The notes under the pieces are model-generated. The model was not told where the DNA came from. It made no database searches and was given only the letters and a program-made list of their open reading frames with translations. The translations under genes and the position numbers were made by a program. Shown piece by piece: positions 9,101-40,500 of a DNA stretch of 64,000 bases. The stretch is from Paragordius varius (Eukaryota > Animalia > Nematomorpha). Within the stretch, counting starts at the first letter, position 1, and the number at the start of each line of letters is the position of its first letter. Location of the stretch: contig OZ176053.1 of assembly GCA_964247055.1 (NCBI GenBank), positions 10,602,001 through 10,666,000 of the forward strand. The letters are read 5' to 3'.

Positions 9101-9708
9101 TAATATTTTCAAATTTTTAACTATGATAAAATGAACCTTAAATAAAAAAAGAATTTAATTAATTTTGATTGTTTTTTGTGAACTAACTAACCATTAAACA
9201 TCTAAGAATATGATGTAAATTAGATTAAAAGTTATTTATTTTGATTCGTGCAAAGTATAATATATGAGAGATTAATTTAAAAATGACACATATCATCACA
9301 AAAAGTGTAGAGATAAAATTGAGTATATAAGCAAGCTAAAAATAGGTGTTACTTGACAATATACATATATTATATAACACAATTAATTTATGCATTTTTT
9401 GTAAAAATTTAATTTATGTATTATTATTATTATGATTAATAATGTAATGATGTTAAAATATGTCTATTTTAGAGATTGTTACAAAAATATCGTTTAAAAA
9501 TTTATTATATATATATATATATATACTACACTATACTGTGCGCATGTCAAAATATTTTCAAATTCTTTTACACATGAAAAATGCTACAATGTTGATGAAA
9601 ATGGCACTCAATTAAACAATTTTTTTAGATAGTCTCTATTAATAATTCAGACATTACGTATTTGTTACAAAGGAGTTAGGACAAAATAAGTTTCATGATA
9701 ATAAGAAA

Positions 9709-12700
9709 TTATAAACGTTTCATCATATCAAGTTCTGAGGGGACTAATGTTAATTGTGTTTCAACCCGATTAACACCCCCAGCAGCCCTCTTTTTATTAT
9801 TTCTGTAAGCATGGCCGATATCCTCATCTACGGAGGAGGTTATAACCATATCATCTAGGGAATCATGCATAAATTTTTCTTGTTGAATGATATGAGGTGG
9901 ACTGATCCCCGATTTTAGTAAATGCTTGTTGGCAGTTTTGAGCATACGTTTTTTGTTAATAGCTATATGTGTTTTGATAAAATTCAATTTTACAAATACT
10001 AACAAAATATCATGCTTATAAACATATATAATATATAAATATACCTGCCTTATCAACTAGAAGGAATGTGAAAAAATATTTGAAAAAAATATATAACAAA
10101 ATTAGAATAAGGTGTAGTATATAAAAAATCTAAATTTTATCGAATGCTGCCGTAAAAATGGTAAAATTAACATTCTTTCATAAAACATATATTTTAATTC
10201 ATAGCCAACTAAACAATATGTATGGAATTAAACAAAACCTTAATTACGGTTTTATATAAATTTTAATTTTACGCCTTATCTTTTCATTTTTATGCAATAA
10301 AATAGAATTTTTTGATCAAAGAAAAATTACCGTCTTCGTCCTTGCTGACAAAATCGCTTGTTTCATCGACAAGCGTAATTTCTTTTTCAGAGCTATGGCG
10401 AATTCCATAGAAAAAGTATATGAGGAATCCGGCAGTCATCCAAACACTAAATCGAATCCATGTATTGACGCCGAGTTTCATCATGAGGTACATGTTAATA
10501 AAGATACTGAGGAAAGGGATTAAAGGAACCCATGGAACCTAACATAATTGATTAGATTATTTTTTGTAATATCATGAGTGTTTAATACGAGCAAAATCAC
10601 AATAATAAAATTAAAAAATGAAAAATTAGGCTTTTTGCGACAAATACTTCTTTTTTAGGATGTAACTATGTTAATCTAACAGATTATTATTATTAATTGG
10701 TGTTTGAAATTTTAGCAAAAATATATTTTTCCAGATATTTTATATTCAGTATAGTACCTACCTTAAAATTTAATTTGGAATTATTTTGAGGTTGAATGAG
10801 GATAATATAAAACGTTAGGAGAATGAACACACCCAACACAATGAGAGATATCAATGATCCAATGTGAGAATTCAATACATAACTTTCGGCTTTGACCAGT
10901 ATAAGGTTGAATAATATTATGCACACGGCTAGAACATATAATATAAAATTAGGAAAACTTTTAGCAGAAAAATAGGCTAAACTCTACAAATATAAAATAT
11001 TGATATGTGAAAACCTTCATCAATAATCGCAGATTGAGTTTGTAGTTTTTTAAAATCGTCGGAGTAAAATATAACCAATTAAATGGGGAACAAAATTAAG
11101 ACCCTCTACTTCGAGGTTCCCATAGTTCGCACTTACACATAAATTTATCATTTTAATAAAAATTAAGTAAGTTTTTACTTTAGGTTTGTATATATTTAAC
11201 GATTTGTTTAAATTTTTAACAAGTATTTTGTCATATAAAACTAAAAAACTTACACATAACGGTAGTGGCATAAGTTACAACTTTAGCCGATGCCTTACTA
11301 GCCTTTCCCCGAGGGAAAAATAAGCGTCGTACGAATGGTCGACCCCCATTCTGATCGTAATCTTCGCTATCATCACCTTTCTCTAATTTTTTGGTGTTTG
11401 GTCCTGTTACAACCATCCCATCTTTCGATAACATGATCCTAAAATACAAATTTTTATTGCATTAATAAATTTATTTTACTTATAACTTGAAAAAGCATTA
11501 AGCGTATAAAAATGACTTACTCTTCAACATTACTAAATTAATGAAATATTGATTTTTGATATTTATGGAATAAACTGTTAAATTTAAAAATATGTTTACT
11601 CGTCCGATGGCATCAATGGTAATGGTGTTGAAATTATTCCAATGCAAGATTCATTTGGTCGATACCTAAACATAAATATGTTTCATATTATTCAACAAAA
11701 AATATATATATTTTAATTTCAAAATTAGAGAATATATGTAGTAATATATTATAATTTTGACCGGTCAAAAAAGTAACCGCCTTTTGGCTTAAATATGCCG
11801 GAGATTACCAGTCTATAAATAAAAAAGAAACTGAATTAAACAAACCAACATACCAATTAAATCGGTGTTTAAAAGAAAAAATAAATATTTTTAAATTGTA
11901 TCCAAAATTTTTAATATCTAAAACTTTTATACTGTCATGATAATTTGTCAAATTTAACCTATAAAAATTGTGCAAACCTGAGCAATAAAATACAAATGGC
12001 CACAAGAGTGTAAGCAAGAAGCGTCCCAATAGACATCATATCAACCAATTCCTTCAAATCAAATAACATTGCCATAACACCTATCATCATCGGATAATAA
12101 AATTATGATTAATTTCAATTATTTCAAAATAATTCTAACATCTATTAAAAAAATTATTCGATATATCAGAATCAAAAAATTAGTTTTTTTATAAATGAAT
12201 TAATTGATAAAAAATTAAATTAATAAAAATATTATACCTGCAAAGGTGCCCGCAAAAACGGTTGCATATATAGGAGTCTTTAGCCTTGGATTAACCTTGG
12301 CCAAAAAACGGAAAAGTAAACCATCACTAGCCATGGCATATATGACACGAGGGAGAGGGAACATGGAACCCATTAAACTATTATCCATGAAATAAAAGTT
12401 TTTTAAATTTAACATATATACTTAATAAAAAGCATGTGATTTTAAACAATATAATTAGAACATAATCAAATGATTCTAAAAGACACAACAATATTCACTG
12501 TATTGTTAATTTTCGATGATAAACCATCGTATATCAAGTTTTTGGTCATTTTGTATATTGATACATACTTTCGCATTTAAGTACTAAGCTTAATATTTTT
12601 GGAAAACTATACATTCCTCAATTGTAATTCAAAAATCAACAAATTAATTCAAAACACTGGTAGAAAAACCGAAAATTGGCCCAAAAAATCAAATTTTAAT

Positions 12701-15700
12701 ATAAAAACCTTGTAGATAATCCACACATACTCCCTACCGCTATGATAATTTTCACTTTATTCCAACCGACATAGGAGAAAGCAAATGGTATAGGGGCATC
12801 ACTATCCAGCAAATAGTATGGCATCATAAGGGTTAAGGCAGCCGAAATCCCAACATACGCTAAGAAACAACTCGTGAGAGCAAGAATAATACTGATGGGC
12901 AGCGTTTTTTGTGGGTTTTTAACTTCTTCGCCTGATTATGTTATTATCCAAAAAATATAGAAATTACAAATCAAACTATGGCGTTTTTTTGAAATTAATC
13001 ATCAAATTTTTATTTTAAAACAAATCATTGAAAATAATCATTTACATCCATCTTAAATAAAAATCCGCACTTATGATTTGGAGTTTTGGGCAAAAATGTC
13101 GCTGTTAAATTTAGATGTTAAAAAATGTACTTTTGAACGAATGTTGGATTTAAATTATCGTTGAACAAAACGTTTACCGATAACGATGTTTTAAAGAAAT
13201 CTCAAATTTGAACAGCAAAACTATAACAAAAAAGATATCAAAAAACTAAAAATTTAATAGAAAAAAACCTGTAGTTGCAATAGCATCAAACCCAATAAAA
13301 GCGTAAAAACAAGTGGCAGCCCCACTCAGAACCCCAGAAAATCCGAAAGGGAAAAATCCACCTTGACCCAAAGCTTGCTTTGTTATAGTACTGGGATCTT
13401 CACCCGTGACATTGAATATTCGTTTCACAAGAGTAGTTGCATTAGTGTTGCTTGATGATTGTGTTAATAGTGTGGAAGAATTTAAATTGCCATTAAGAGC
13501 GGAGGTGGATCCCGTTAAAGCGGCTAAAATCTATTTAGGAGAAATAAAAAGATGGATTTCTTAGAAGGGTGAATATTTATTTGTATCTAAATTATTTTAA
13601 ACGTTTTTACAATTATAATACTAAAAGTTACGAAATATCTGCAATCACTTTATCAATGTTTAAGCCAAAAATCTATTGTAACGTCAAAAAAGTATTCATA
13701 ATACTGCATATGGATCGATCCGCCAATTAGCTAAATCACCCTTTATAACACCCGACACGATGACAAATAAAACGACAACAATGTTCAACATGGTGAAGAC
13801 ATTGTTGAAACGGGAAGAGCTTTTGACACCCACAATGAGAATAACTGTAATTTGTAATATAGAGTTTTAAGATATAAAATATTTATCGGTAGAGAATATT
13901 GAATATTTTTCATCAAAATTATAAATGCCAAATATGAGTAAAAACTCAATTTCTTAGGCATTAGTCAATGTTATGATAAAAAAATCTAAATTTACATTAA
14001 TTTCATATTTGACAACAACGATAACATATCTTTCGATATAAAAAAACCCAGACTTTAAAAATGAGTGTCTATGTCAAAAAAACTTAACTGACTTGTGTTC
14101 TGATCAATACTTTTACCTGTTGTCAAAAACTTTTGGGGTTAATTTAGATTAGTAAACAAAACAATGACAAAAGCATATATTTTAAACTTCGAAAAAAAAA
14201 GTATACATACGTGTTGAAAAGATTGTGATTGCAAGTGCAAGGAAATCTGGATATTCACTCAATTGAGCCAACGATATAGGGATAAATTTTCGCAGCGCAT
14301 TTGATATTCGTTTGTAAGTCATGGCATCAAGTGTGGCACTCCACGCACGGGCCACACTAGCCGCCCCTTTATTATAAAACAAAAATGGTAAAAATTGATC
14401 AAAAAATGCTAAAATATTTAATAAAATATCAAATAAAAAATGGAAATGTGGTTTGATAAAATGTCAAATAAAATTTCGATCTCAAAATTTTAAAAAGTGG
14501 GTTAATTATAAATAAACATATTAATTACATGTTAAAAATCGAGGAGAAATCAATTAGTATATTTTCACAAAAGTAGATTTTTAATTATTTTAAGAACTTT
14601 TAGTTAGTTGTATAAATGATACAAACAAACGTATTATATATTTACCGATCATATATTCCAAGATTAAATTCCAGCCAATAATGAATGCCCAAATTTCACC
14701 AACTGTAACATAACTGTAAACATAGGCGGATCCGGTTTTGGGTACGCGGGCCCCAAATTCGGCGTAACACAGACCTGTTTTCAATTAATAAAGCATAACC
14801 AACATTATAAAGCCAAACTTAAACATTTAAGGACAAATATTTTTTTCAATACTTTTTTAAACCCTGTATAAAATTTATTTTTACAATTGTGAAATATATA
14901 TGCACAATAAAGTATGCAACCAATTTACATCTCTATAAGCGTTATCTGAATGGTTGCCTTTCTATGCAAAAGAATATTTATCCTTTCGTTTTAACGTTGT
15001 TTGTCTTTATAATTTTAACTTAACTGTAGTTATAAAATCTGACTAAATAATTACCCGCAAAAACTGATGCAATGGCAGCTATAAGAAATGAAAATATAAC
15101 GGCAGGTCCAGCAACTTCTTTGGCCACACTTCCCGCTACGACATATATACCGGCACCTAGTGTACTCCCAATTCCTGTAAACAAGGAGAAAAATAAATTA
15201 TAAAATCTTTTTAGGATACATCCATTTTTTTGTCCAATTATCAAAATAAATTACTTTGGAAAACATAACCTATTACTACAATGCATAAATGATAAAAATT
15301 ATTAAAACACAACTTTACTCTCATTACTTTCAAACGTTTTGATGTTATCTTATTGTATGATCTTGATTTATTATCAGTACACAATTATATTAAAGCGTAA
15401 AATATTGGACTTAAATATAAATAATTGCACCCCAAATATATGTGGGCGCATCTATTATTAAGGGTTAGAGATCATTTATGATGGCCCAATATAAGTCAAA
15501 TGTTTTAGTGAAAACTAGCGCCAAGATTCACCCTAGCGCGAGCAACTATTGGAGGAGGGGTGGTATAAAATATCTTGAAAAATTTCCAACTATACGAAAT
15601 ATTGAGTTTATGAAACGGTAAAAACAAAAATAAAAATCTAGAAAAATTAGGCTTTAACAATAAAATATAAGGCAGGATATATGAATCATCTAAATTTCAG

Positions 15701-17292: not shown

Positions 17293-17924
17293 GTGGAAAT
17301 ATGTATTTATAAAGTAATTTAGATATCTAATAGTAAAAACATTTTTGCAATTCAATTTTGTGTTAAAACATGTTAAAAAATTTCATATGATGCAATAAAA
17401 TGAGACGAGCGGCAAAACATTTTACGCTATCAACAGATGTTACATAAATTTTTAGATGTGGATTTTAATATTTTACTTTAAATATGTATAATTTCTTCTT
17501 TTCAAACTATGATAGTAATTATTTTATTAGTTGGTACTACTAAAGATTATGACATCATTTAATATAAATATAGTCCATGTTTAACCGTATGTTTAAATTG
17601 ATAAAATGAGGCCTTTTTAAGCGAAAACGGGATCAATTAAAGTGAAATTATAAATACCATTTATAAGAATATAAATAAAACATTTTATTACAACTATGAA
17701 TATAATATATTAATTTACATCTTATTTAATTTAACTTAATGTTTTAAATGGACAGCTCAGGCGAAAAATATGATTAAATATCTATCTGATATTAATAGAG
17801 TTTACACAAAATCTGGGGCAATAAAATAACCCGTAATACATATAATTATATTGGTAGTGCGCCTCTAAAAATTAAAGTTTTATAAAAATATTGTTTTACT
17901 ATTAAAATATGTAATACATGATAT

Positions 17925-18833: not shown

Positions 18834-20399
18834 TTAATTCAAGCGTACTGCAGACTATTTCGAGGCAGGATGGAAACGTTATAAAAACGCTTTAAGACAT
18901 TATAAAAATACTTTTAAGGTGCTAAACATTTCTACAATTTCAAAATTTTGATTATAATATTTGTTCGTTTCCAAATTTATGTAAAAAAATATTGTATTTT
19001 TTTGAGAAAATTAACCAAAATTTTAAGGAAAAAGGGGTAGTTCTATAAATATAAGCCATGCCGAAATCCATTATAATTTAAAATATATGCTAAATTATGA
19101 CATCAAAAGGTTTTTTTCCAAAAAATGCTCAATATTTAATTTATAGCAAAATTTTGTTGAATCAAGTTTTATGTTATTTGCATTACCATTTGATATGTAG
19201 TGGATACTACAACGTTGCATCATTATATTTTCCTACATCATTTTATTATATGAATCGCATCTTGCGTTTATGTTTGTGCGTCATTATTCGTGGAATTCTT
19301 ATATATATATTCGTAGAATAAAAGACATATTCTTACAATTGTGACGCACATGCATGTTAAAATTATCATTAATTAAAAAGTATAAATATAACGAAATTCT
19401 TAATAAATTATTATTGTTTTGTATTTTCATCACCGATCCGTAATATTCAATACGTAATATTCGATACCTAATACCATTATAAAATGTTTAAATATATAAT
19501 GAAAACAATTTTTCTAAATATTTGGATGATGCCACATATTTCTCTTAAATTTTAATTGTTCATTGTTAAATCTAATTCAATGTAAAAACCATTTATATTT
19601 ATCAATTATTGCAGAACAAATATATAATCGAAATTCTGATTTGATAGAAATGTTTAGCATCCTTGAACTATATAAAAAAGTGGTTATATAACATTTTGAA
19701 GTGTTTTTATCCCATTATGCTTCAAAATGTAACTCTTTATACCATAATTTTGCTATAATTAAATTTTTAAGCAAATTATTTATTTTTTCGAAAACTTTTT
19801 TGATGTGAAGATTTAGTATACATCTATATTTAAATTTTTTATCGCGCAATCTCGGTATTTTTATGTTTATTTTAAGAGAACTAGCCCATTTTAAAGCGCA
19901 AAAAAAATTTGGGACTTTCGGAGTCTTTATCTAAAAATTAAATTTTTTGAAAATATTGTTTTGCATATGTATGTAGTTTACGATATATTTTATTGATGTT
20001 TTTTGGAATAATGCCTCTAGCTTTCACCAAAAAAAAGTTATTTAATAAATATGCGCGAATTTTGCATTTTCCGATATGCAGCACTCACCACAAAAGTGAA
20101 AATAACTTTCTTATATCACTCGTAAGGGCCAAAACCAAAATCCTAATGATAATCCTGATACATTTTCCTATCAGATTATATATTTTATCAGGTTCTGATG
20201 CTGTGTTCTTGTTGTCAAGGTTTTTTATATCCCCTCAAACTCCATAACCTCATTGATAATTTTGAGTTTTTGGTGTTTTCTGGACTCTATTCTCTTAACT
20301 GGATCATAACAAAAAGGCCTATATAGGTGAATGTGAAACCATTTTTTTGACCAAGTTGAGCCATAAAAGCAACAATATATTATCTAATTTCTAAATATT

Positions 20400-20870
20400 T
20401 GATTTAGGATCAAATGCAGACAAATGCGATTTTATGCGGATTAGTAACAAAAAAACTGTAATACTTTTTTTTTCTATTATTTTAACTGTGTTGATCATTC
20501 CAGTATTAATTTACTCAGTTTTCGGTAATCGAATAATATATAGAACATTTATATTTTCCTTTATGCGCACTTGTATTATAGTTTAAAAAACATGTGCGCA
20601 TTTGCTATTATTTTTTTGGCAAAACTAAAACAGAGAGACTTCCTTAAGGGATTTATATTATGAGTGGCAAATATGACAAGATAATTTTTTTATTCTGTAA
20701 GTTCTCTCAACACAGTAGCATATGGTATACAAAAAAATTCTCCATAATTAAATGAATAAAATTAATGTTAAAACATAGGAAAAAATTATTAAATTTTAAA
20801 CATTGGTTTCGTTACCATCCGCTACTGTGGTATATAAGATGCATCAACATAAAGATAAAAAATTAAATAT
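20400..20870 (+). pseudogene. Possible highly decayed CR1/L2-type LINE 3' fragment
   Basis: Reads ...NADKCDFMRISNKK..., like the LxLNxxKCxxM segment of LINE RT C-termini. Many stops and frameshifts. Confidence 0.25.
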
Positions 20871-20925
20871 TAATATATCAGTTATTTCGAACAAAAGTCA
20901 TATAATTATTAATTGTCTCTAATTT

Positions 20926-23900
20926 TCATAAAAACATTTTGTAAGGATTCATTATTTGGTATGGATCAAACAATTGCTTAATTTGTTTACAAAGGTGCCA
21001 ATAATTTAATGACTTATGGTTAATGTTGGTAATGTAATCTTTTTTGCAAAGACCAATACCATGTTCAGCACTGAGACTCCCTTCCCCAATCATTTGATAT
21101 ATGTATGGTTGGAGAGCGTCTAATACATCTTGATCGAATAGTTTAGTTGTGACATTTAAATGTAAATTACCATCTCCAAAATGACCATATGAAACTATGC
21201 GTTTAATTTTGTTACCTACAAATATAATTAGGATTGATCATATAATATGACTAAATTTTATCTATAATTTAGTAATTAACCAAATGATTTTGATATATAC
21301 ATGAGTATTTTTGCCGGTTACATATAAAATATGGCTAGAACCAGCCAAACATATAACTATTAAGATAATAATAAACGGCTTTTATTAAATCTAAAAAAAG
21401 ACGTCGGAAAGATAAGAATATTTAATATAATTGAAAATAAATACATTTATCACTATTAAAACTTGTTTAGACAATTATTGATATTTTATTCTACCATCTT
21501 TTCCAACAAATCAAAATTGTTTGATATATATATATCAAAGTTATCCTTAAAAAATTAAATTCACCATAAAAAAACCTTGATTTTGGGTTAATATAATTTA
21601 TTATTAATATGAAATATTTATGGAAAACACTGGATTTATTTTAGGATTAATTTGAATTGTCAAGGTAAATTTGAATTCAGGGTGAATTCGATATGCAAAT
21701 GGTATATATTATAATTGATCAATTTTTTAACCCATTTTTTCGGTCAAATGTTGACGAACTTCTTTCACAAAAGGTAAAATTCGTCCTGACGAAACAGATA
21801 TATCGTATTTATAGACGTAACCGTCTTTTAATAAAGATGCAGTAATTGATTCTCGTAACTTCCAAAGCGCGCTCATTTGTTCAAGAGATTGTGAAATGAT
21901 TATATCTACGAAAGCAAAATTGGAATGAAATATACAGAATTATGGAGGGCAAAAATTTACAATATCTAGATAGATCCTATAGTGGCGCAACCCCACATTA
22001 TATAGAAAAATAGAAATGAAATATAATATTAGATCAGAAGTGTCCAACACATGGCCCTTCAAAATATTTCTGCAGGCCGAGAGAAATTTCAAATACATAA
22101 TTTTACGAAATCCAAGTAAAAATGATTTCCGCAAATAAATTTCTGTGAAAATCTTTCCGAATTTTGGCAATAAACTAGCAAAAAATCTTAAAATAAATAG
22201 TAGTTAGATTTTACGTTCAAAATTTAATAAAATATTTGTAAATGCCCATATATTTAGCGAATACGGCCCTTTGTTTTCTTAATGCAAAAATGCGGCCCGC
22301 AAAGCTATATTTGTTGGACACCCCTGTTTTAGATCCTAACTTAAATATAAGCATATCTCAGCTTATTTAGATATCGGTTTAAAACATCTTCATTACCTAT
22401 CTTAACACTTTAAATTTGCGCCTTTTAATTTAGTAATCTCATGAATGATTACTCTTTCGTTGATTTCTAACCCAAAATAGACAGATTTTAGTTTTACCCT
22501 TACTCAATCATGATCACATAAATACTCTTATGTTAAACGGTCAAAAAACCAAGTGTTCATGTATTGTTCTCACAAAATATATTTTTATTGATTAAACCGT
22601 TTCTAGCCATTACAAATTTTAGATTTGATGTAAAATCTAAAATATCGTAATTATTTAATGAATATAATAAAAAAAACTTTTTTGTGATATGGCTAATGGT
22701 AAAAGTTGTAACCCATACTCTTGCAATATTTCGGTTACATTCCTATTGCCTGAAGCCTCGATTAAACAGTAAACTTGAAACATTTCTCCATTATTTTCTA
22801 ATTTTAATACAGAAAAATTAAAAAATTTACAAAATAATTGATAATTAATATTTATATTTTTTTTATCTTTCATCTATATGTATATAAATATTAGTGTGTT
22901 AAAAGGAAAAATTAAGAAACCTTGATTTAACAATTGTTTTGGCAAAGCATAACCCAAATTCTCTTGTACTGATAACAATGCATCTAATAAAAAAAATTTA
23001 TTAAAGACTTTTTAATACAAATATCATAAATATTATGCTGCATGATAAAAATATATTGCATTATTGAATATTGAGGTATTTTGAGTGAGCACGGAATGAC
23101 AATTTGAAAATAATATATAAATATATTTAGAAAAAAGGCTAAAATCTATTTGCTTAACTAAAAATTTGAGGTATAAATTTCACATCTATAATTCATAAAA
23201 TCCCAAATTAATCAGCCTTTACACTCATATATTGGCCGATCCAAATATTTTATACGGATTCATGATTCCATTTGGATCTATCATTCGTTTCAAGGAACAC
23301 AAAAGGTTCCATTTGGGTGTAGGCCGTGATTTAACATTTTTCGCCTGACTATCCTTTCCCTTTTCGGGAGTTTCCCTACCATTTACATTTCCAGCAGCAG
23401 GGGAATCATCGAAATAAGAAAAACTGTTTTCATCTGTGTTGCTGATCGACGACGAAGGTGGACAATAGATATGATTTAGCGCATGAAATTTTTGTAAACC
23501 TACCCCATGTTCAGCGCTAATACTGTAAGCTGAAACGGTGGAGTCTTTAAAAGGATGTATGACAGTTGCAATATTCAAATTTTTACTTTGCCCATAATTA
23601 TAAATTTTATTTTCTAAATTATGCAACAAGTGATTGGGTGATGATAATGATGATCCTGCATCCAAACGCTCTCGTAACATGTTTGATGTTGTGGACATGA
23701 TATTAAGGTGCATATTTTGATCTCCAAAGTGGCCACATACTGCAATCTTGACATTTTGGTCCGCTATATTATCTAGTCCATTGGAGTAAAAAATAAAATT
23801 AGGCAGACGAAAAGAAAAAATTTAAAGACAAATTATTTTTTAAAAGACAACGGACGATACTATACTTACTAAGCGTGGTATCCATTTACATCTCCATTGG

Positions 23901-26900
23901 TTTTTTTACGGCCAACGATAAATTTTAAAAATTAAGGTTTAAAAATGTGTTACCTAGCATCTCTCTTTTAATTTCTACGTTTTGGTTATATAGTTTCAAT
24001 TTTAACAGTAAATATTCTAGAGATAAATTTTAAGCATATGAGAACAAAATTAAAAATTAAGCAAGCAAATTATAAAAATATTAAGAAAACCTCTGTTGAC
24101 AATTTCCACCATATCAGCTATGTAATTTTTCCAATGAGTAATAGGGATAGAAACGTCATAACTCACTAAAAATTGATCTTGTCTGAGATCGTTTTCATAT
24201 TTAAGCGATTTTTTTGTCTCACTTGCGATTTCCTTGTTGGGAGTTTTTTGTCTAAAACTTTCCGAAAGGGCTGGATAAATGTGTTCCCTCAATTTCCATA
24301 TATCATAGTATTGAGTAGTATTTTTAGCTAATGTACCCTCAAAACTAACTTTATCATTATTCACATTGTTAGTTACCATATCATAGAGTTTTGTGCCATA
24401 CAGCATTAAATTCTCCGTGCTAATACTGGTGGATTCACTTTCAATATTCTTGTCGTCAGGCATCAATTTTTTGTTTCTATAAGTCCCAGACTCGACCAAA
24501 AAGTAATATGGGTACATATTTTTAAATGGATATTGATCCTTAAAGGATGAAATGACCGTTTCGATACAAGCTTTTGTAAAAATGCAAAGTATAATTATAA
24601 AGGAATAACGCCAAGGATTTATTAGTTAAATTTATTTAATTGGAATGCATGGACCAAGGCCTGTAACAAGGAGAATATTAAAATAAAATTTATAAAGTAT
24701 TTTGAGACTGTGGTTTTAAAGGTTAAAGTTTAGGCGTATTAAAATATATTTCTTTAAATAAAAAATATATTTATTTCACGAATATTTCATGTAACTAATT
24801 TGAGTCAAGAACAAACCTAAATTAACACAAATCAAATGTTTTTACATGTTATATATTAATAATATATGGATGTTCAAATTTTATAGAACCGTATAGATTA
24901 AAAAGGATATTTTGTGTTAGCCTTCCAACAAATAAAAGGCCAAAACGGTAAAATTAACATTTAAATAACCGAATACAATTCTCAGAATTTGTAATGCGAA
25001 TGAAATAATTTGTTTGTTAAATGTGTACAACAGTTAATGAAAAATTACCTTAATATATTAGTCGTATAAATTATTATTGTTAAGAAATAATTACATCCAG
25101 ATTTCCATTGAAACCTCTGATTTAAATTATTTAAATTTCATCAAAACAGGACACGAAATTTCATTTATTTAGTTTTAAGAAAAAAATCACTACCTTTATC
25201 CATAAACTCAAAAGCAGATAATGTTTCACCCAAGACTTGACGAGCTAATTTATAGGCTTCGATAATTTGTTGAAAATCGGAACATCCTATTTGTGGGAAA
25301 ATATATTTTATTTAGGAGATGTGTATAAAAAAATATTGTAAATATACCAAATAAGGCCACATTCACATCTTTTGGTCGTATAGGACACAATAAACTAATT
25401 TTGGTTATAACGCCCAATGTTCCTTCAGAACCTGTAAATTTAAAATAATAAAATTTGTGATAACTAGATGTATTATTTTTCATCGATTCGTCAAATTATT
25501 CAAAAAGTACCGATAAAGACTTGTTTCAAATCATATCCGGTATTGTCTTTTCGTACAGTGTTTAACATGTTACAAATTTCTCCGTTGGGTAAAACCTAGT
25601 CAAAAAAGAGTAGTACCCCCAATAAAACGACTTTTTTTTCAATTAAAAATAATGGAAATTTTATATAAAAAAGATATAAAATAGAGAACTTATAAAGATA
25701 CCAATATTTTTAAATGATTTAAGAGCCTATTGCAATGAGTAGCGAAAAAAGGAATAGAGATATTAGTATATCACACTAATAACTTTGTTTGTGTGAAAAA
25801 TATTAAGGATAATCTTTTCATACGTTTTCACAATATTTTTTACTCTATATTCATTCAAATAATCTGATATTTATATATTACCACTTCTAATCCTAAAACT
25901 GAGCCCCTCAAAGATCCATAACGAATAAGTCGAACGCCCCCGGCATTGGTTGCGACATTCCCGCCTATTTGACAACTGCCTTTGGAGCCCAAATCGAGAG
26001 GTACAATAAGCCCGTGAGCAGATACTGTTTCATCCAAGGTTTTTTGAACACAGCCTGCTTCACAAATAACTACACCTGAGAGTGGAAAATAAAATGAATT
26101 AAAACATTTGTATTATTTCAATAGGAATAGATTAATTCAGGGCTGTCCAATTTGGAAAAATTCGACGGACCGCATAGATTAAGTATATGAGCCGTTATAA
26201 AAATTTTATTACATTTCAAGCATAAAAACTGTCATTAATAAGAAAGCTATTCATTTCACCGATTTATTTATGGGTTTGTTGCTAATCGGATATGGAAATT
26301 TGCTTATGAAACATCCATTTTACTAATATTTGTGAGCATATTTTTGCACAATGTGCAATGCGTATCAATTTGATAATTTTGGAAAATTTTGCGGATCGCA
26401 CTTTATATCTCTCGGAGGATCGCATGCAGCCCGCTGGTCGTATGCTGGCCTCTTGGTTAATCAGTCGTTGCATATAAATATATTTTTTCCCTTTATCTAT
26501 TTGTTATTCTAATCCTCCACAAAACTGGATAATTGAAATATTTGTAATATTTCATATTAACTTTTTGTTTGATTAATTACACTAGTCGACAAATTTGGAC
26601 ATTTTTGAGCACCACCACTCAAACTTTTAAATTATGACTAATTTCAGTGTTTTTAAACCGAATGTGAAAATTTTTTGATCCCGCCAATCAGAATTTTGAA
26701 ATATTATAGGTTTTTCTATTTTTCAAAAACAAGAGAAAATCGAGAGAAAATTAAATATAACTTTATAATAAAATGTTTTTATATAATAAACTTAATATCA
26801 TTTATTAAAGCGTTTTAAACTCTATCTTTGAATATAAATATGCCATTTAAATATAAGAGAGAAAAAAATAGTACGGACTTAAACGTCAAAATTTAGTCTT

Positions 26901-29900
26901 TTTCTTTCAAGTGAATTTTTAATACGTATAAAAATTTTTTAAAAAAATACTAAAAAAGGCATTCTATGGTTTAAACCTTCGGCTTTCAGATAGGCTATAT
27001 TTTTTTTGTTAGTTTTCGTTCTTTCACTTATTAGGCTTTTTTTCTTGAGTTGGTTCTTACAAAAAATTCTTTATTTATACCTAGTGAATATACTTTATTT
27101 TTTAAAATTATTGGTTGTTTTGTATTTTTAATTTCAGATGGATGTTGTGTAGCCACTTTTAGTAGAATTTACTATTATGGGATTAAACCATTTGTATTTA
27201 CCTAATCTTTTTATTCAATTTAATTGTAGAATTTATCTAACTTTATTCTGTGAATTGGTTAATTTGACATGTCAATTTGCCTGGATTTTGCTTGCAAGTC
27301 TCTCTTATCGGGCTTTACGATTACTTATTGTTATCTTTGCCATATCCGGCATAATTGGATCGCTTAGGGGATATGAAGAGCTTGTGCAGCCGCCCGAATC
27401 TATCACACTATACATAAGCCCCTTTTATATTTTTAATACTTTGGCCCTTAGCTTGTTTAGTATCTTATTTAATGCCTAGAATTTTGTTATTCATGCATGG
27501 AATATTACATGTATCGACTTGTTCGTTTGAATATTTTAACATATGTACACGAGGAATGATTGTTATTTTTAAATTAAATACAAATTTAAAAATTAAATTT
27601 CGGAAAAATCCTATTGGTGGCTTCAATTTTCTTTTTTGTTTTGGCCTTTCCATGCCAATAGGTATCAGAAAATTCAAAAATAATGGGGTGGTGCAAAACC
27701 TTGTTGAGGAGTGTTATTATCAAATCGTTACGGCTTTACAATATTTTTGACAGAAAAAAGTGATCAAAAAGGCGTTATAAAAATATTTGTTGAGAGGTGA
27801 GAGTTAAATAAAATTCAACAATTGAAAAACGACTCAAAGTTAAATGTATTGATTCCATTTTCAGAGATAAAATTCATTAAAATGGCCAATATATATTTTA
27901 CCACACCTATATTTAAAAAGTAAACAATTTTAAAGGTTAATATCAAAACAATACTTATATTTTTTCATATATCATAACATATTAATTAACACTTGTGGAC
28001 TTTCAATTACTTTTTTGATATATAGATACTTTTGTAAAAATTCATTTCATTAAGGTTAAACGTTAAGTATTTTGGCCTTAACAACAATTAATAAATTAGA
28101 TTACGAAATGTTTTTATATTTCAAGGTTATAAAGGACATTAAATTCAAATGTAAGCTAAAATAACTATGTGAATCAAATAAAAGCGCTATATTCAAAAAC
28201 AATAGTTTCCTATGTCGATTAAATTAGCTCTCAAATCTAAATTAAATTTTTGGCATAGAATCTTGATTCAAAAGTTATATAGCACAGACTAAATCAAGAG
28301 ATAAAAAAGATATTTTAATAATATTAGTAGTGTAGTACATATAAAATTATATATATATTAAAAAAAACTATAATAATAATAATAATAAAAGGTTTCAAAA
28401 AGAGCAATTATAGATGGTAGAATGGTTATGGGGGCAGACTTGTCACTATACTTGTTAATATATCAAAGATCAAACCCTTAATTTGCCCATTTTTCTAATA
28501 AATGTCCGTCCTAAGAAAGATATTAAATCTTTCAAATGCTTTTAAAAAAATTTCCCTTTATATATAAAGTAAATATAATTTTTGTATTCACATATATATC
28601 ACTAACTTTATTAAGTATAAGTTAGTAGTTAAGCTTTATATTTTGACAAAGGCTGATATACAAACCTATGTTTAAAAAAAAGTTTGTTAATTGAATTAAT
28701 TATGTGACTCAAAATTCTTATAGAGCTAGTTGTGATTTCGCTATACATGTTTATTAAGCGATACCTGAAAGTTGATCGATAGAAAGAACTTTATTCATGC
28801 TAGACATTGAGAGGATAATTTCATCAAATACTGGAATGCTCCCATGGACTAATCCTGTATTACCACCCTATGATAAAATAAAAATTATAAATGGGATGCC
28901 CGATAAAAGAAGCAAAAGCTTGTTAGACAGTTTATAAATACAATCATTTACAGTCACAATCAGTCGATTGATGCTAAAAATGCAATATAATTAAAGTTTA
29001 TGGTGTTATCTACATAAGGCAAATTTAAATAGTGACCAAAATTTTTAAGGCCAGCCTTGGTAAGGTCAGAACTGGTCTGACCCTAGAACCCTGGTTTCCA
29101 AAATGGGGCGTAGAAAAATTTAAAGGGGCTAAAAATTTGGAGAAAAAACCATAAATTTATATGCTTAGAGTTAACTTAATAGATTTATCGTTTGATGTAA
29201 ACAGGGGCGCAAGAATTTTTTTCAATATGGTGTGGGGTGAAAAAAAGGTAGGAACCCTTGCCATAGAAGTAATCAATAAAAATTTTATAAACCTGTGGTA
29301 CAATGGCTAATTTTCTGTCATTACAATAGGAAACAATTTTAGATACCTCTTGAACAGTTTTAGGTCTTAAAACTAATCTGCTTGATCCTATTTATAAATA
29401 TATAATAATAAATTATTAGAAAAATAAATGATTAGCTTTGAAATTTGAAAAGAATACGGCATACATAACAGTACGCTGGATATTATATTCAAAAAAGATT
29501 TTATAATTTGTAGTAAACAGAAAATATATATACCGAAAAGATATTATATAGGTATTCATTCTTATCAAAAATATAATTATGGAAAAAATAAAAATTTTTG
29601 CGAAAACATTGCATTTTAAAAATAATCTTAGAAATTTGAAACATTTCATTAAAATTAAATCTTTTAGAAAAATATTTTATGCTGAATAAAAAAATTACAA
29701 CATACCTTTGCATTCTTGCAACCAATCCACGTTATAGGCATCAAGCAACGATTGATCTGTAATAACTTGTGAAGGAGTTAGAAAGCTATTAAAATAATTT
29801 ATATCCTCGGTTTTTAGATTTGCAAACCATCCTCTTTTAATATCATTATATTTAAGATATGTCGGTTGTGGATGTAAAAATCTTTTTAAAATTTTGAACA

Positions 29901-29901
29901 T
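20926..29901 (-). CDS. D2HGDH: D-2-hydroxyglutarate dehydrogenase, canonical isoform B (~498 aa); shared exons 29901-29706, 29387-29293, 28867-28765, 26075-25882, 25595-25511, 25431-25348, 25286-25194, then 22983-22921, 22797-22678, 21905-21732, 21215-20926
   Basis: FAD domain: [98 protein letters not shown]-terminal half: [59 protein letters not shown]. All introns GT-AG and in phase. Confidence 0.92.
22035..22326. mobile_element. hAT (Charlie-type) MITE in a D2HGDH isoform-B intron
   Basis: Ends cagaagtgtccaaca / tgttggacacccctg; 8-bp flanks tattagat / ttttagat (7/8 identical); internal gcggcccg motif. Confidence 0.75.
23225..24570 (-). CDS. D2HGDH: D2HGDH alternative C-terminal cassette A (exons 24570-24091 and 23772-23225); with exons 1-7 gives a ~625-aa divergent isoform
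   Basis: Acceptor at 24571 is in phase with the exon 7 donor (DK|ACIETV). Open frame contains [51 protein letters not shown] and [11 protein letters not shown], with its own TGA at 23225. Confidence 0.85.
26138..26456. mobile_element. Degenerate hAT-type MITE
   Basis: Starts cagggctgtccaa and has gcggatcgc/gcagcccgc motifs near the right end. Right TIR and TSD are degraded. Confidence 0.4.
26580..27713 (-). mobile_element. Non-autonomous Chapaev3-like (CMC superfamily) element in D2HGDH intron 3
   Basis: Termini CACTAGTCGACAA / CACTCCTCAACAA (inverted, 10/13); TTA 3-bp TSD on both sides (26577-79, 27714-16). Both ends are homologous to the ends of the element at 49150-50746. Confidence 0.8.
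29089..29260. mobile_element. hAT (Charlie-type) MITE in D2HGDH intron 2
   Basis: Ends ccctggtttccaaa / aaaaaggtaggaacccttg; 8-bp flanks ccctagaa / ccatagaa (7/8). Confidence 0.65.
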
Positions 29902-37500: not shown

Positions 37501-40500
37501 CTGTTGTGAAAGAAGTATCCGTCTCCAACTCGCTTTGCTTCTCTGAATTTTTTAAAGATAATATTTCAACCACGGAAGACCCAAAAATTGTCTTTTACAT
37601 CACGAATAGAGTTTATAGAATGTGTTTTATCTTTAGAAGTCAAAAAATCACGCCATAGAGGATCCAATTTCCAAATGTTGAATGACTAATTTACCATTAA
37701 CAAAACTATCTAGAGTTTTGGTAATTGTGTAAACATGAGTTTTACCTATTTGATGAACTTCTTTAAATGCTTCTTACATAGTATATTGGCATCGTTTGCA
37801 AATAACTTGATTTTTTTGTCATCGAAGTAATAAGGCGAATTTCATTTGAGAACAATGAATAAATAGGTTGTTTTGTTTTCATGTGAATTGTAAAAAGATT
37901 TAATAAAAAAAAAAATAAAACGAGCTAGGTCATTTTTTTAAGGTCGGGACCTATGACCCTAAATTTTTGACCTGGTCGGCAAAACCCTAGGTGGAAAGCA
38001 AGCTAAGCAAAAAAAATATATTTTATCCAGAGATCAGCGATAATAATTCATCAAATTTTATTTTTTCAAACTTGGCTCTTAACATAATTGATAATTAATT
38101 TTTTTTAAAGCTTCATTAACAATTACGCCATCTCAAATCGTATAATGATTTCCAATGAATTGGATGCATGTTATGAAGATGTTAAATTAATCATAATGGA
38201 ATTGTAAGTAACATTTCATTAATGTTAATTTCTACAATAATATTCGTAGATTAGGAGCGTAAAAATCATTTTTTAACAAATCTATCTATTGACAATCTTA
38301 TCATAGTAAAACTGCCGAATATACCTACCTTTAACACAATGGAAGTATTTATAAAAGATATTGTAAATTTAAAAATTAAGGCGATACCAAACCAAAAGCG
38401 CAACTAACATGAAGGCTGCTAGAAATTTGATCAATAAAAATCAAAAAACAATTTGATTAAAGAATTCGTAAAACTGATTACTGATTGCATCAATCAAATA
38501 AAATCAAAAATTTAGTAAAAAAAACTTTAAACCATTCTAAATTAACGCTATGTTTAGGAACCATAACTCGTTTTTTACACAATTAGAAAAACTCTAGATA
38601 GTTTTGTTAATTGCAAATCAGCCATGCAACAAATGGCAATAGAATCTCTATAACGCAATTTTTGCCCCTAAAAATAAAAACAGTTTATAAACTTTATATT
38701 TGATATGGATGACAATTTTTTGGTCCTCCTAATTTCACAGACGTAGTTAGCGAGTTGGAAGAGGATACTTCTTTCATAACAAGTATTAAATATGGAATGA
38801 ATGCGAAAGCTTGTTGATAAAACATACTGTTTTCGGGAACCAGATAGGTGAATCAATACAATATTTTGGAAAGCGTAAAGAGCAAGCGATAACCGATTTA
38901 GTTCTCTTGGTTAATAAAACCATGTCGACCAAATTATTTAAACAGCGACGATACCACGATGCTCTCAGATGGATGTCTTAATTATAAATTTCTATGTAAA
39001 AAATATACTCAGAGTTTGTATATATGGCCAAAACTCGAAATAAGTTAGAATAAGACCATTTGGAGGTCAAGGAATTTGGGAATATCGGTACATTTATTGG
39101 ATCAGGAGAATAACTTTCATACCCGCTTCAAATAGTGCAACGGAAAAAAATTTCTATGCAGAAATATGCAATATTTCCCAAAAAACCAACCCGTTTCGAT
39201 GAAATCGTTTAAATAAATTAATGGCCAAGGTAGGATATTGACACAACTAACAGGGATGGTGTAAGGTAAAATATTATTGATTAATTTTTTATATTTGTAA
39301 TGTTTATAACCTTTATTAAAATGGTTCAATGACTAGAGCATAAATAAGTATTTGGCTTCAAGAAATTCCTTATTCGGCAGTCTTTTCGCTGTTAATTTGG
39401 TTCTTGTATTGTATTAAATTCAATTCTTAACGCAATATATTTTGGCGGCCATTTAAATCTTATAAGGCCTTATGTATGATTCCAAGAAATATCGTTAAAT
39501 GTAGATATATAATTAATTTTAATTATTGGTGTTAGTAATACTTTTTGAAATATAATTTTTATTTAGAATTTTTTAAATATTTATGTATGTAGCATTTAAT
39601 TTTTAAAAAAGGGTCAAAATCACAACCCTACTTATCTGTTATGCGGTAAATATTTTGGATTAATTAATATTATCCATATTGTTGCATTTAAAAATTTAAT
39701 TTATGGCAATACTATTAAATATAAATCCCAAAATATTTAAAAGGATATGTAACATCATATTGAAATGATTAACACTTGGATACAAGGCATTCATTTCAGT
39801 CCTACGATTCAAATTGGGGTAGTTAGATACCCCAGGCTCGTTTAAATATGTATATTTCAAAAAATATGGAATAAATTAAAACCATGGCAAAAGTTTGCAT
39901 TTATATAACATTATTGCACTGAAATTTAATAAAAATTCATTCAAAAATATTTGATATTACTTATTCAGGGTTATAAATATTTAGTTATGACGACATGTAC
40001 GCACAAGCGAAATACAAAAATAATGCCAAATATACCAATTTTTCTGTATATATCAATGTTACTGTGATTTTAAAAAAGTAAACTTAGTTATAGGCTTAGA
40101 ATTAAATAAACAGGCTATTATGCAAAAATGAAAATAAAAATGGCGTCCAAGTAGTTTGATACGGTACTTTTTTTCAAAACTAAATTTTGTTTAGATATTT
40201 TGGCTTATTCAAACAATTTTAATAAAGATAGAAGCATAAATTTAAATTGGAACCGTTTCTTTCAATAGTTTTTTAAAATTATAAATTTAAAAATTTTCTG
40301 GGGTATTTAGATAGCCCAATTTGAATCGAAGTCTTAAGGTAAAAATGTATTTCGCTAAAGAAAAAGTAATTTTTTTTAAATATATAATAATTTGTAATAT
40401 AGTGATCACTGATTGATGAAAACACCCATGATGTATATAAAAGATAGGGGTGAATTGTTATATAACACATTATTTTGTGTTTATTACTGACACAAGGACA

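What the first reader, a model, noticed from the sequence alone, without database searches (positions are those of the whole stretch)
20926..25286. Domain-swap enzyme locus: one D2HGDH FAD domain, two complete alternative substrate-binding halves
Seen in sequence: the phase-1 donor after exon 7 (...EFMDK G|gt, 25193) is in frame with two acceptors. One at 24571 starts cassette A (2 exons, own stop at 23225). One at 22984 starts cassette B (4 exons, own stop at 20926). Each encodes an entire, stop-free C-terminal half through to the DPxxIMNPYK end, and A has no N-terminal half of its own. A and B have diverged far in sequence and exon structure, yet both frames remain open, which argues for selection on both. 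Established: in VAO-type flavoproteins the C-terminal domain sets substrate specificity. Inference: alternative last-exon or polyadenylation choice yields two mitochondrial dehydrogenases (~498 and ~625 aa) from one gene. I do not know of this arrangement for D2HGDH elsewhere, but cannot run the search.
Basis: partly seen in the sequence, partly recalled or inferred. Interest (0 to 1): 0.92.

Follow-up and report, generated by a model that had tools for sequence, protein, structure and literature searches.

The report
One enzyme gene, two substrate-binding halves
A horsehair-worm gene for the mitochondrial enzyme D-2-hydroxyglutarate dehydrogenase has one cofactor-binding half followed by two alternative, anciently diverged substrate-binding halves; the unusual one is expressed and has lost the residues that grip D-2-hydroxyglutarate, so the gene probably makes two enzymes with different substrates.

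Summary
On the minus strand, seven shared exons (FAD-binding domain) end in a phase-1 GT donor at 25194. It is in frame with cassette A (24570-24091, 23772-23225, own stop; 625 aa) and with cassette B (four exons, 22983-20926, own stop; 498 aa).

The same order, N-A1-A2-B1-B4 with the same phases, is present in Gordionus, another horsehair-worm genus. On a tree the A cassettes group together and the B cassettes group together, so the arrangement is old.

B keeps every D-2-HG-binding residue. A keeps the five catalytic and Zn residues, but three of the four residues that bind the distal carboxylate are changed (T390Y, K401S, Y432C), identically in both worms.

In one RNA-like run the A1-A2 intron is spliced, and A exons stand about 5-10 times deeper than B exons. 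The exon7-A1 junction was seen only in an intronless, indel-bearing copy in three DNA-like runs and in Gordionus RefSeq models. The exon7-B1 junction was not seen: the B exons are spliced to each other but run on unspliced from A's 3' region.

Verdict: a real, selected, dual-cassette locus. A is shown to be used; use of B is inferred from its conservation. This is a new variant of alternative-last-exon domain swapping. The scan earlier noted a similar duplicated C-terminal block (DBT) elsewhere in this genome.

The parts
25194..29901 (-). Seven shared exons encoding the N-terminal presequence and the FAD-binding domain (283 codons + 1 nt): 29901-29706, 29387-29293, 28867-28765, 26075-25882, 25595-25511, 25431-25348, 25286-25194. 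The last exon ends in a phase-1 donor (G|gt at 25193-25192).
   Evidence: Translation and splice sites. PF01565 FAD_binding_4, E 3e-13 on exon 4. Junctions 25595->25511 region and 25882->25595 region are spliced in RNA-like run X9. 69-73% aa identity to the Gordionus exons.
24091..24570 (-). Cassette A, exon A1 (480 nt, 160 codons; acceptor and donor both phase 1). It is the first two thirds of a diverged substrate-binding domain. It carries R386 but Y at the T390 position and S at the K401 position, plus a 27-residue insert.
   Evidence: Depth about 520-1050 in RNA-like run X9, against about 80 for the B exons. Two alleles seen in RNA, one with an in-frame 18-nt insertion (records 27/28).
23225..23772 (-). 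Cassette A, exon A2 (548 nt including TGA at 23227-23225). It holds H434, H441, N443, E475 and H476 and the C-terminal [10 protein letters not shown] tail. C stands at the Y432 position. It has two low-complexity inserts.
   Evidence: PF02913, E 1e-12. Best PDB sequence match is human D2HGDH 6lpn. The A1-A2 intron (23773-24090) is spliced in X9 at depth 632. The indels seen in the RNA contigs are all multiples of 3.
22921..22983 (-). Cassette B, exon B1 (phase-1 acceptor, in frame with the exon 7 donor and also with the A1 donor).
   Evidence: In X9 it is contiguous with unspliced upstream sequence up to 23176 (record 25).
22678..22797 (-). Cassette B, exon B2.
   Evidence: The 120 nt between the laid pieces of X9 record 25 fit it exactly.
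21732..21905 (-). Cassette B, exon B3. It carries R386, T390 and K401 ([21 protein letters not shown]).
   Evidence: Aligned to 6lpn_A 332-376 (chain number + 46 = UniProt number). Spliced in X9.
20926..21215 (-). Cassette B, exon B4, with Y432, H434, H441, N443, E475 and H476 and the stop at 20928-20926.
   Evidence: PF02913, E 5e-21. 6lpn_A, E 1.4e-20. Spliced in X9.
22984..23224 (-). A 241-nt spacer between A's stop and B1: the 3' UTR of isoform A and, for isoform B, the tail of the skipped intron. The X9 contigs branch at about 23147-23176 (depth 686 upstream, 86.5 going on into B1), which fits a poly(A) site for A with about 12% read-through.
   Evidence: from_end values in table 3; record 25. 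The poly(A) site itself is inference.

Best explanation
This is one D2HGDH-family gene of a horsehair worm (Nematomorpha, judged from the nearest relative) with a single FAD-binding half and two alternative 3' cassettes. Each cassette encodes a whole substrate-binding (cap) domain plus the C-terminal tail.

Splicing exon 7 to A1, then to A2, and ending at A's own stop gives a 625-aa enzyme. That enzyme keeps the Zn/catalytic core for D-2-hydroxy-acid oxidation but has lost the residues that hold the distal (C5) carboxylate of D-2-hydroxyglutarate. It most likely acts on a different D-2-hydroxy acid, probably a monocarboxylic one. Skipping A (exon 7 to B1) gives the canonical 498-aa D2HGDH.

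Shown: the anatomy; conservation of the whole arrangement in a second genus; the residue pattern; expression and internal splicing of both cassettes; and A being the dominant form in the one RNA sample reached.

Inferred: the exon7-A1 junction in mRNA (seen only as a processed copy in DNA-like runs and in Gordionus gene models); the exon7-B1 junction (from B's strong conservation and its lack of any other N-terminal half); the poly(A) choice; and the change of substrate.
For: Anatomy and open frames.

Gordionus locus L001:
- It has the same order on one strand (exon 7, A1, A2 with its own TGA, then B1-B4), with phase-1 'G|gt' donors on exon 7 and A1 and phase-1 acceptors on A1, A2 and B1.
- The A1/A2 intron lies where the B3/B4 intron lies.

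Tree: window A + Gordionus A 100/99, and window B + Gordionus B 100/99.

Residues:
- Mapped through 6lpn_A, the multiple alignment and PMC7801405.
- R386, H434, H441, E475 and H476 are kept in both A and B.
- T390, K401, Y432 and N443 are all kept in B.
- In A they are Y, S, C, N (Y, S, C, T in Gordionus). This is the direction the paper describes for D-LDH and GlcD: a large hydrophobic residue at 390 and small side chains at 401 and 432.

RNA-like run X9:
- The joint 23772->24091 stands at depth 632.
- A contigs are at about 350-900, the shared-exon contig at 519, and the B contig at 86.5.
- All coding indels in A are in frame: +3, +3, -3, +18.

Intronless copy:
- Joints 24570->25194 and 25286->25348 occur in X10, X3 and X11.
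- That copy carries indels (-2 at 25249, -10 at 24523, -1 at 25995) that are absent from the unspliced contigs of the same runs and from X9.
- I read it as a processed copy of the isoform-A mRNA.

Other support:
- Gordionus RefSeq isoforms X1-X4 all join exon 7 to A1.
- Variants in B are 10 synonymous to 5 non-synonymous (P = 0.0008).
- The AF2 model of the Gordionus A cassette hits VAO-family D-2-hydroxy-acid dehydrogenases.
Against: - No joint 25194->22983 (exon 7 to B1) was among the 15 of 52 joints printed. The X9 contig that holds B1-B4 runs unspliced up to 23176, so in that sample the B exons look like part of read-through transcripts rather than isoform-B mRNA.
- The exon7-A1 joint was not listed for X9 itself; exon 7 is barely covered there, possibly because of the tool's filter.
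- The kinds of the runs are my inference from depth patterns (X9 RNA; X10, X3, X11 DNA); the tool labels them '?'.
- The RNA comes from a specimen 2-12% diverged from the window.
- The Gordionus RefSeq models join A1 to B1, not A1 to A2. That would make a chimeric protein, and no RefSeq isoform ends in A2.
- The polymorphism count for A (4 synonymous, 5 non-synonymous) is not significantly below the neutral expectation (P = 0.17).
- No enzyme data exist; the substrate change is read from four positions.
Confidence: 0.7

Rival explanations
1. Only isoform A is made as a protein from this locus in practice. The B exons are carried in the extended 3' UTR of read-through transcripts, and the canonical D2HGDH function is weak, stage-restricted to a degree that amounts to loss, or supplied from elsewhere.
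For: In X9 the B contig (depth 86.5) is continuous with sequence downstream of A's stop up to 23176 and overlaps the A 3'-UTR contig (depth 686) by k-1 bases. No exon7-B1 joint is listed.
Against: - B keeps all nine active-site residues.
- It shows 10 synonymous to 5 non-synonymous variants.
- It is 43-52% identical to Gordionus B.
- Its introns are accurately removed.
- A relic would not stay open: P = 2e-8 for 215 codons.
- Only one RNA sample, of unknown stage, was seen.
Confidence: 0.13
2. The B half is reached through A1 (exon 7 -> A1 -> B1, in frame in both species). This gives a chimeric protein of about 658 aa with A1 inserted between the FAD domain and a full B domain, as the Gordionus RefSeq models have it.
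For: All four Gordionus RefSeq isoforms read exon7-A1-B1. In the window A1 is 480 nt with phase-1 ends, so 24091->22983 would be in frame.
Against: - In the window's species the A1 donor is seen joined to A2 at depth 632, and no 24091->22983 joint is listed.
- The chimera would carry two copies of the first two thirds of the cap domain, which fits no solved structure of the family.
- The ENA annotation of Gordionus joins A1 to A2 (P0005).
- The RefSeq models are 5'-truncated and may be evidence-poor.
Confidence: 0.1
3. Cassette A is a decaying partial tandem duplicate (pseudo-exons) without a function of its own.
For: - A evolves fast: 26-39% identity between the two worms, against 43-52% for B.
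- It has long low-complexity inserts.
- Pfam and PDB searches fail on A1.
- Its synonymous/non-synonymous count is not significant.
Against: - The 342-codon frame is open in an 8%-stop background (4e-13), and it is also open in Gordionus.
- The five catalytic residues and the three derived residues are shared by both species.
- All indels in the RNA contigs are in frame, while the intronless copy shows -1, -2 and -10.
- It is the most abundant 3' end in the RNA-like run.
Confidence: 0.03
4. Assembly artefact: a collapsed or mis-joined tandem duplication of two whole genes.
For: None found.
Against: - The same layout is present in an independent chromosome-level assembly of another genus.
- Contigs of other runs bridge intron 7 into A1 (X10 record 7) and A's 3' region into B1 (X9 record 25).
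- A and B share no DNA similarity that could mislead an assembler.
Confidence: 0.01

Closest known systems
Canonical animal D2HGDH (human, PDB 6lpn; PMC7801405)
   Same: Isoform B has the same two Pfam domains and all nine active-site residues, and is 45-50% identical to fish, horseshoe-crab and beetle D2HGDH. Isoform A shares the FAD half and the five Zn/catalytic residues.
   Different: Known D2HGDH genes are described with one C-terminal half. Here a second, alternative half lies inside the last shared intron. In that half T390, K401 and Y432 are replaced by Y, S and C, and there are large inserts.
D-lactate dehydrogenase / GlcD branch of the same 2-hydroxy-acid dehydrogenase subfamily (mouse LDHD, PMC10589216; Porcellio D-LDH 9qit)
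   Same: According to PMC7801405, these paralogues keep R386, H434, H441, E475 and H476 but carry a large hydrophobic residue at 390 and small residues at 401 and 432. Cassette A shows exactly that pattern. The Foldseek hits of the A-type model include D-LDHs.
   Different: By sequence A is D2HGDH-derived, not an LDHD orthologue: its best PDB sequence hit is 6lpn. It keeps N443 in the window species. It is supplied as an exon cassette, not as a separate gene. Its substrate is untested.
Alternative last exons, or tandem-duplicated exon blocks, that swap a specificity-determining part of an enzyme. Examples: the UGT1A locus (alternative first exons) and mosquito/Drosophila GST genes with alternative exons (my own knowledge; Drosophila GSTO2, GSTT3, GSTZ2 and GSTD11 in PMC4195677).
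   Same: One shared constant part, several alternative exon sets of common origin, and a product specificity set by the variable part.
   Different: Here the variable unit is a whole multi-exon half-enzyme of 215-342 aa with its own stop. There are only two units, at 21% identity. They belong to a VAO/PCMH flavoenzyme, for which I found no report.
Gordionus sp. D2HGDH locus (RefSeq XP_065323704-710; ENA CAK9292721/CAK9292722)
   Same: The orthologous arrangement, N-A1-A2-B1-B4, with the same phases and the same derived residues.
   Different: It is annotated either as chimeric exon7-A1-B models or as two separate fragment genes. Neither annotation states two alternative C-terminal halves. Its introns are far longer (28 kb, 9 kb, 6.8 kb).

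Membership tests
D-2-hydroxyglutarate dehydrogenase (VAO/PCMH 2-hydroxy-acid dehydrogenase subfamily) | N-terminal FAD_binding_4 domain plus C-terminal FAD-oxidase_C domain | tested here: met
   PF01565 on exon 4. PF02913 on A2 (E 1e-12) and on B4 (E 5e-21). A1 alone gives no Pfam or PDB hit but aligns with B1-B3.
D-2-hydroxyglutarate dehydrogenase (VAO/PCMH 2-hydroxy-acid dehydrogenase subfamily) | Zn2+ ligands H434, H441 and E475, plus R386 and the catalytic base H476 (PMC7801405) | tested here: met
   Present in both A and B, and in both Gordionus cassettes.
D-2-hydroxyglutarate dehydrogenase (VAO/PCMH 2-hydroxy-acid dehydrogenase subfamily) | C5-carboxylate binders T390, K401, Y432 and N443. 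K401 and N443 are strictly conserved in orthologues, and mutating K401 abolishes activity (PMC7801405). | tested here: not met
   This verdict is for isoform A, which has Y, S, C, N (Y, S, C, T in Gordionus A). The feature is met for isoform B, which has T, K, Y, N. So B is a D2HGDH, and A is a D2HGDH-derived enzyme that should not be filed as a D2HGDH.
Alternative last exon (3' cassette) gene | One upstream donor in frame with two downstream acceptors, each heading a block with its own stop | tested here: met
   Sequence. The same holds in Gordionus.
Alternative last exon (3' cassette) gene | Transcripts that carry each of the two junctions | tested here: inconclusive
   The A1-A2 and B1-B4 junctions are seen in RNA-like X9. 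Exon7-A1 is seen only in the intronless copy in X10, X3 and X11 and in the Gordionus RefSeq models. Exon7-B1 is not listed.
Alternative last exon (3' cassette) gene | A separate poly(A) site after each cassette | tested here: inconclusive
   Depth falls from 686 to 86.5 at about 23147-23176 in X9. No poly(A)-tailed reads could be examined, and there is no canonical AATAAA within 80 nt of A's stop.
Processed (retro)copy of isoform A mRNA | Exons joined exactly at the parent's splice sites in genomic DNA, with differences of its own | tested here: inconclusive
   Joints at the exon 4/5, 6/7, 7/A1 and A1/A2 borders in X10, X3 and X11, with indels that the unspliced contigs of the same runs lack. 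That these runs are DNA is inferred from even intron/exon depth and repeat-copy scaling. The copy is not in the window, and its poly(A) tail and flanks were not seen.

The most novel reading that the evidence does not exclude
Horsehair worms have kept, since before their genera diverged, a two-in-one flavoenzyme gene. The cap domain is exchanged by the choice of 3' cassette, turning a D-2-hydroxyglutarate dehydrogenase into a dehydrogenase for another D-2-hydroxy acid (D-lactate-like). The non-canonical form dominates in at least one life stage, possibly standing in for a lost LDHD-type gene. The same solution arose independently in stick insects. It may be part of a wider habit of this gene-poor phylum, since a duplicated C-terminal block of DBT was noted in the same genome.
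Probability: 0.3. Interest if true: 0.75.

Novelty: new variant of a known kind. Interest (0 to 1): 0.62.

Why it matters
This would be a clean natural experiment in modular enzyme evolution: the same FAD domain is paired with two cap domains that have diverged to 21% identity, and the specificity residues are changed in a readable way. It gives a directly testable prediction: isoform A loses D-2-HG activity and gains or keeps activity on monocarboxylic D-2-hydroxy acids.

It also corrects the current annotations of the Gordionus gene, which are either chimeric or split. It suggests that in a phylum known for massive gene loss, alternative 3' cassettes may replace separate paralogues.

The independent duplication of the D2HGDH 3' block in stick insects, with changes at the same three positions, hints at a recurrent route.

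Tried and rejected
- phmmer of A2 against 1.84 billion cluster representatives found no close relative (best E 1e-5). Only inspection of the hits revealed the Gordionus A-type fragment P0005.
- PDB and Pfam searches with A1 alone were blank.
- The look-up of encoding contigs failed for P0005 and P0139. It worked only for the longest isoform, P0256.
- Because a spliced protein has no reference, I could not submit the full isoform A or B to the homology, structure or atlas tools. I used single exons, a mixed alignment as a profile and the Gordionus cassette for folding. That model is moderate (pLDDT 72, TM about 0.45 to full-length chains), so it shows the fold family only.
- The RNA-labelled runs of the species (X4-X8) hold none of the locus, so I did not lay them.
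- The retrocopy is not in the window, and its reading frame could not be settled.
- Placement of the A clade relative to the animal D2HGDHs is unreliable because of long branches (stem 4.9 changes per site), so the age of the A/B duplication beyond 'before the two genera split' is not claimed.
- Literature searches for D2HGDH alternative C-termini or exon duplication found nothing relevant.
- A poly(A) site for A at about 23147 was considered, but the same contig end occurs in the DNA-like run, so it remains a suggestion.


Full report
**1. What is in the sequence**

The window is very AT-rich (about 27% G+C). The gene lies on the minus strand. I rebuilt it exon by exon.
- Seven shared exons run from 29901 to 25194. 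They encode a short basic N-terminus and a FAD_binding_4 domain (Pfam). They end with ...EFMDK plus one base before a GT donor (phase 1).
- Downstream lie two blocks, each in frame with that donor.
- Cassette A is 24570-24091 and 23772-23225, with TGA at 23227-23225. It gives a 625-aa protein.
- Cassette B is 22983-22921, 22797-22678, 21905-21732 and 21215-20926. It gives a 498-aa protein.
- All introns are GT-AG.
- Both A2 and B4 hit Pfam FAD-oxidase_C. For both, the best solved-structure relative by sequence is human D2HGDH, 6lpn.
- A and B are only 21% identical. At DNA level they share nothing but 27 nt at the SAEHG motif.
- No second FAD half exists in the window.
- Stop triplets make up 8.0% of triplets in this gene's introns, and the longest open run there is 87 codons. 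A 342-codon open frame therefore has a chance probability of about 4e-13.

**2. The arrangement is conserved in another genus**

A search of 1.84 billion cluster representatives with A2 found no close relative. One weak hit, P0005, turned out to be an A-type cassette annotated on its own in Gordionus sp. m RMFG-2023, a horsehair worm.

A profile search then found the RefSeq D2HGDH-like isoforms of the same species, and the locus could be fetched (L001). It has 27% G+C, like the window.

On one strand it carries, in order:
- the FAD-domain exons (69-73% aa identity to the window's);
- exon 7, ending ...EFMDK G|gt;
- A1, about 9 kb downstream;
- A2, with its own TGA;
- B1-B4, beginning about 0.8 kb further on.

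The exon 7 and A1 donors and the A1, A2 and B1 acceptors are all phase 1, exactly as in the window. The A1/A2 intron lies at the position of the B3/B4 intron.

In a maximum-likelihood tree of C-terminal halves the two A cassettes form one clade (100/99) and the two B cassettes another (100/99). So the N-A-B layout predates the split of the two worms. The stem of the A clade is too long to say how much older it is.

From this nearest relative I infer that the window comes from a nematomorph.

**3. What distinguishes A from B**

The structural paper on human D2HGDH (PMC7801405) sorts the active-site residues as follows.
- H434, H441 and E475 are the Zn ligands.
- R386 and H476 bind the C1 carboxylate and C2 hydroxyl, and H476 is the catalytic base.
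- T390, K401, Y432 and N443 bind the distal C5 carboxylate.
- The first five are conserved in the D-LDH and GlcD paralogues. In those paralogues position 390 is large and hydrophobic, and 401 and 432 are small.

I mapped these positions through the 6lpn alignments (chain number + 46) and a multiple alignment.
- B has all nine residues.
- A has the five catalytic ones, but Y at 390, S at 401 and C at 432. It keeps N443.
- Gordionus A has the same Y, S and C, and T at 443.

A is therefore not decaying. It keeps what any D-2-hydroxy-acid dehydrogenase of this subfamily needs, and it has replaced what makes the enzyme specific for D-2-HG, identically in two genera.

An AlphaFold model of the Gordionus A cassette reached pLDDT 72, and 82-89 over the core. 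It matches solved D-2-hydroxy-acid dehydrogenases of the family: 3pm9, an isopod D-LDH, human D2HGDH and mouse LDHD. This shows the fold family only.

The change of substrate is an inference from four positions. No assay exists.

**4. Reads**

The run kinds are not on record, so I infer them.
- X9 has empty introns and spliced joints, and I treat it as RNA.
- X10 is from the same specimen. X3 and X11 are filed under other organism labels. All three cover introns and exons evenly, and the intronic repeats scale with copy number. I treat them as DNA.

In X9:
- The A1-A2 intron is removed exactly (joint 23772->24091, depth 632).
- The introns between shared exons 4/5 and 5/6 are removed (contig depth 519).
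- One 768-nt contig carries B4-B3-B2-B1 correctly spliced (depth 86.5).
- A exons stand at about 350-900 per contig.
- The indels in A relative to the window are +3, +3, -3 and +18, all in frame. The chance of four out of four being in frame is about 0.01 if indels were free.
- Among the printed substitutions, B has 10 synonymous and 5 non-synonymous (P = 0.0008 against 75% non-synonymous). A has 4 and 5, which is not significant.

Two points limit the reading.

First, the exon7->A1 joint (24570->25194) is not listed for X9, where exon 7 is hardly covered. It is listed for X10 (depth 499), X3 and X11.
- In those runs it sits in contigs that also lack the exon 6/7 intron.
- Those contigs carry deletions of 2, 10 and 1 nt. 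The unspliced contigs of the same runs do not have these deletions, and neither does the X9 RNA.
- X10 also holds a spliced A1-A2 joint with its own substitutions.
- The simplest reading is an intronless, probably degenerate, processed copy of the isoform-A mRNA somewhere else in the genome. It is not in the window.
- If so, it is a DNA fossil of exactly the predicted transcript, and its out-of-frame indels contrast with the in-frame ones at the parent locus.
- Independently, all Gordionus RefSeq isoforms join exon 7 to A1.

Second, no exon7->B1 joint appears among the 15 of 52 joints printed.
- The B contig of X9 continues unspliced upstream of B1 to 23176.
- There it overlaps the A 3'-UTR contig (depth 686) by k-1 bases.
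- So in that sample the B exons look like the spliced tail of transcripts that read through A's end, at roughly 12% of the depth.
- The canonical isoform must be rare in that sample, or was pruned by the assembler.
- The specimen and stage are unknown, and it differs from the window by 2-12%.

**5. Interpretation**

- That cassette A is a used, selected coding end of this gene is well supported (about 0.9).
- That B is also translated is inferred. B is conserved like a working D2HGDH half, it has no other N-terminal partner, and its acceptor is in frame with exon 7 in both species (about 0.7).
- One rival is that B is functionally sidelined.
- Another is that B is reached through A1, as in the chimeric Gordionus RefSeq models. 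The junction 24091->22983 would be in frame here too. But the A1 donor is seen joined to A2, and the chimera would duplicate two thirds of the cap domain.
- Decay of A and assembly error are close to excluded.

**6. Comparison and novelty**

- Isoform B passes every membership test for D2HGDH. Isoform A fails the C5-carboxylate test. It should be called a D2HGDH-derived D-2-hydroxy-acid dehydrogenase of unknown substrate that works like the D-LDH branch.
- The genetic device, tandem-duplicated exon blocks used as alternative last exons, is a known kind. UGT1A and insect GSTs are enzyme examples; one search covers Drosophila GSTs, and the rest is my own knowledge.
- I found no report of it for D2HGDH or any VAO/PCMH flavoenzyme. 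The public Gordionus annotations do not describe it.
- Hence: a new variant of a known kind.
- Stick insects show an independent duplication of the last two D2HGDH exons, with changes at the same three positions (T390A, K401T, Y432F).
- This scan earlier noted duplicated C-terminal exons of DBT in this same genome (not tested here).
- Both observations suggest that the phenomenon is broader than this one locus.

Noticed in passing
L002:8963-19779 (Bacillus rossius, GCA_032445375.1): The stick-insect D2HGDH gene has its last two exons duplicated in tandem (8963-9139 + 14045-14293, and 17637-17810 + 19528-19779), plus a third, weaker copy of the penultimate exon at 11609-11791. RefSeq isoforms X1/X2 (650/648 aa) string both copies in series. 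The second copy has A, T and F at the T390, K401 and Y432 positions. Timema douglasi (P0141) shows a similar doubled end. This is an independent duplication: on the tree it sits inside the arthropod clade.
   Followed up: partly
L001:40257-59378 (Gordionus sp., OX940783.2): All four RefSeq isoforms (XP_065323704-710) read exon 7 -> A1 -> B1 and skip A2, giving a chimeric protein with one and two-thirds cap domains. One isoform uses an internal acceptor in A1. The ENA annotation instead splits A (CAK9292721) and B (CAK9292722) into fragment genes. This is either a third real isoform or a mis-annotation. The same A1->B1 junction would be in frame in the window (24091->22983).
   Followed up: partly
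not in the window; seen as contigs laid on window 23746-26075: DNA-like runs X10, X3 and X11 hold an intronless copy of exons 4-7 + A1 + A2. It carries its own substitutions and out-of-frame indels (-1 at 25995, -2 at 25249, -10 at 24523, and a 72-nt stretch replaced by 29 nt at 23545-23618). It is probably a processed pseudogene of the isoform-A mRNA. It is not expressed in X9.
   Followed up: partly
window 21546-21736 and 22040-22330 (intron between B2 and B3 / B3 and B4); also about 26140-26450 (intron 3): Short elements with inverted ends (for example GTGTCCAACA...TGTTGGACAC around 22322 and 22045). They stand at depths of about 50,000 in X10, against about 400 for single-copy sequence, which means on the order of a hundred copies: MITE-like repeats. 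Many of the odd joints fall inside them.
   Followed up: no
window 20400-26100 as covered by runs X9/X10, X3, X11: The second specimen filed under the same species name (X9/X10) differs from the window by about 2-6% in exons and up to 12% in introns. Runs filed under two other organism names (X3, X11) hold stretches identical to the window, alongside the divergent type. This suggests deep haplotypes, cryptic species or mislabelled or infected samples. A 2026 preprint reports species misidentification in another nematomorph genus.
   Followed up: no
window 23853-24579: One X10 contig (depth 313, only 21 nt on the short side) joins 23853 to 24579 with 30 foreign letters. That would delete the whole of exon A1 in one haplotype. 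It is weakly supported and may be a repeat artefact.
   Followed up: no
L001:9581-10057 and 39532-39702: In Gordionus the window's exons 1-3 align as one continuous block, and exons 5+6 are fused. Intron 3 there is about 28 kb, against 2.7 kb in the window. There has been considerable intron turnover between the two worms despite the conserved cassette layout.
   Followed up: no
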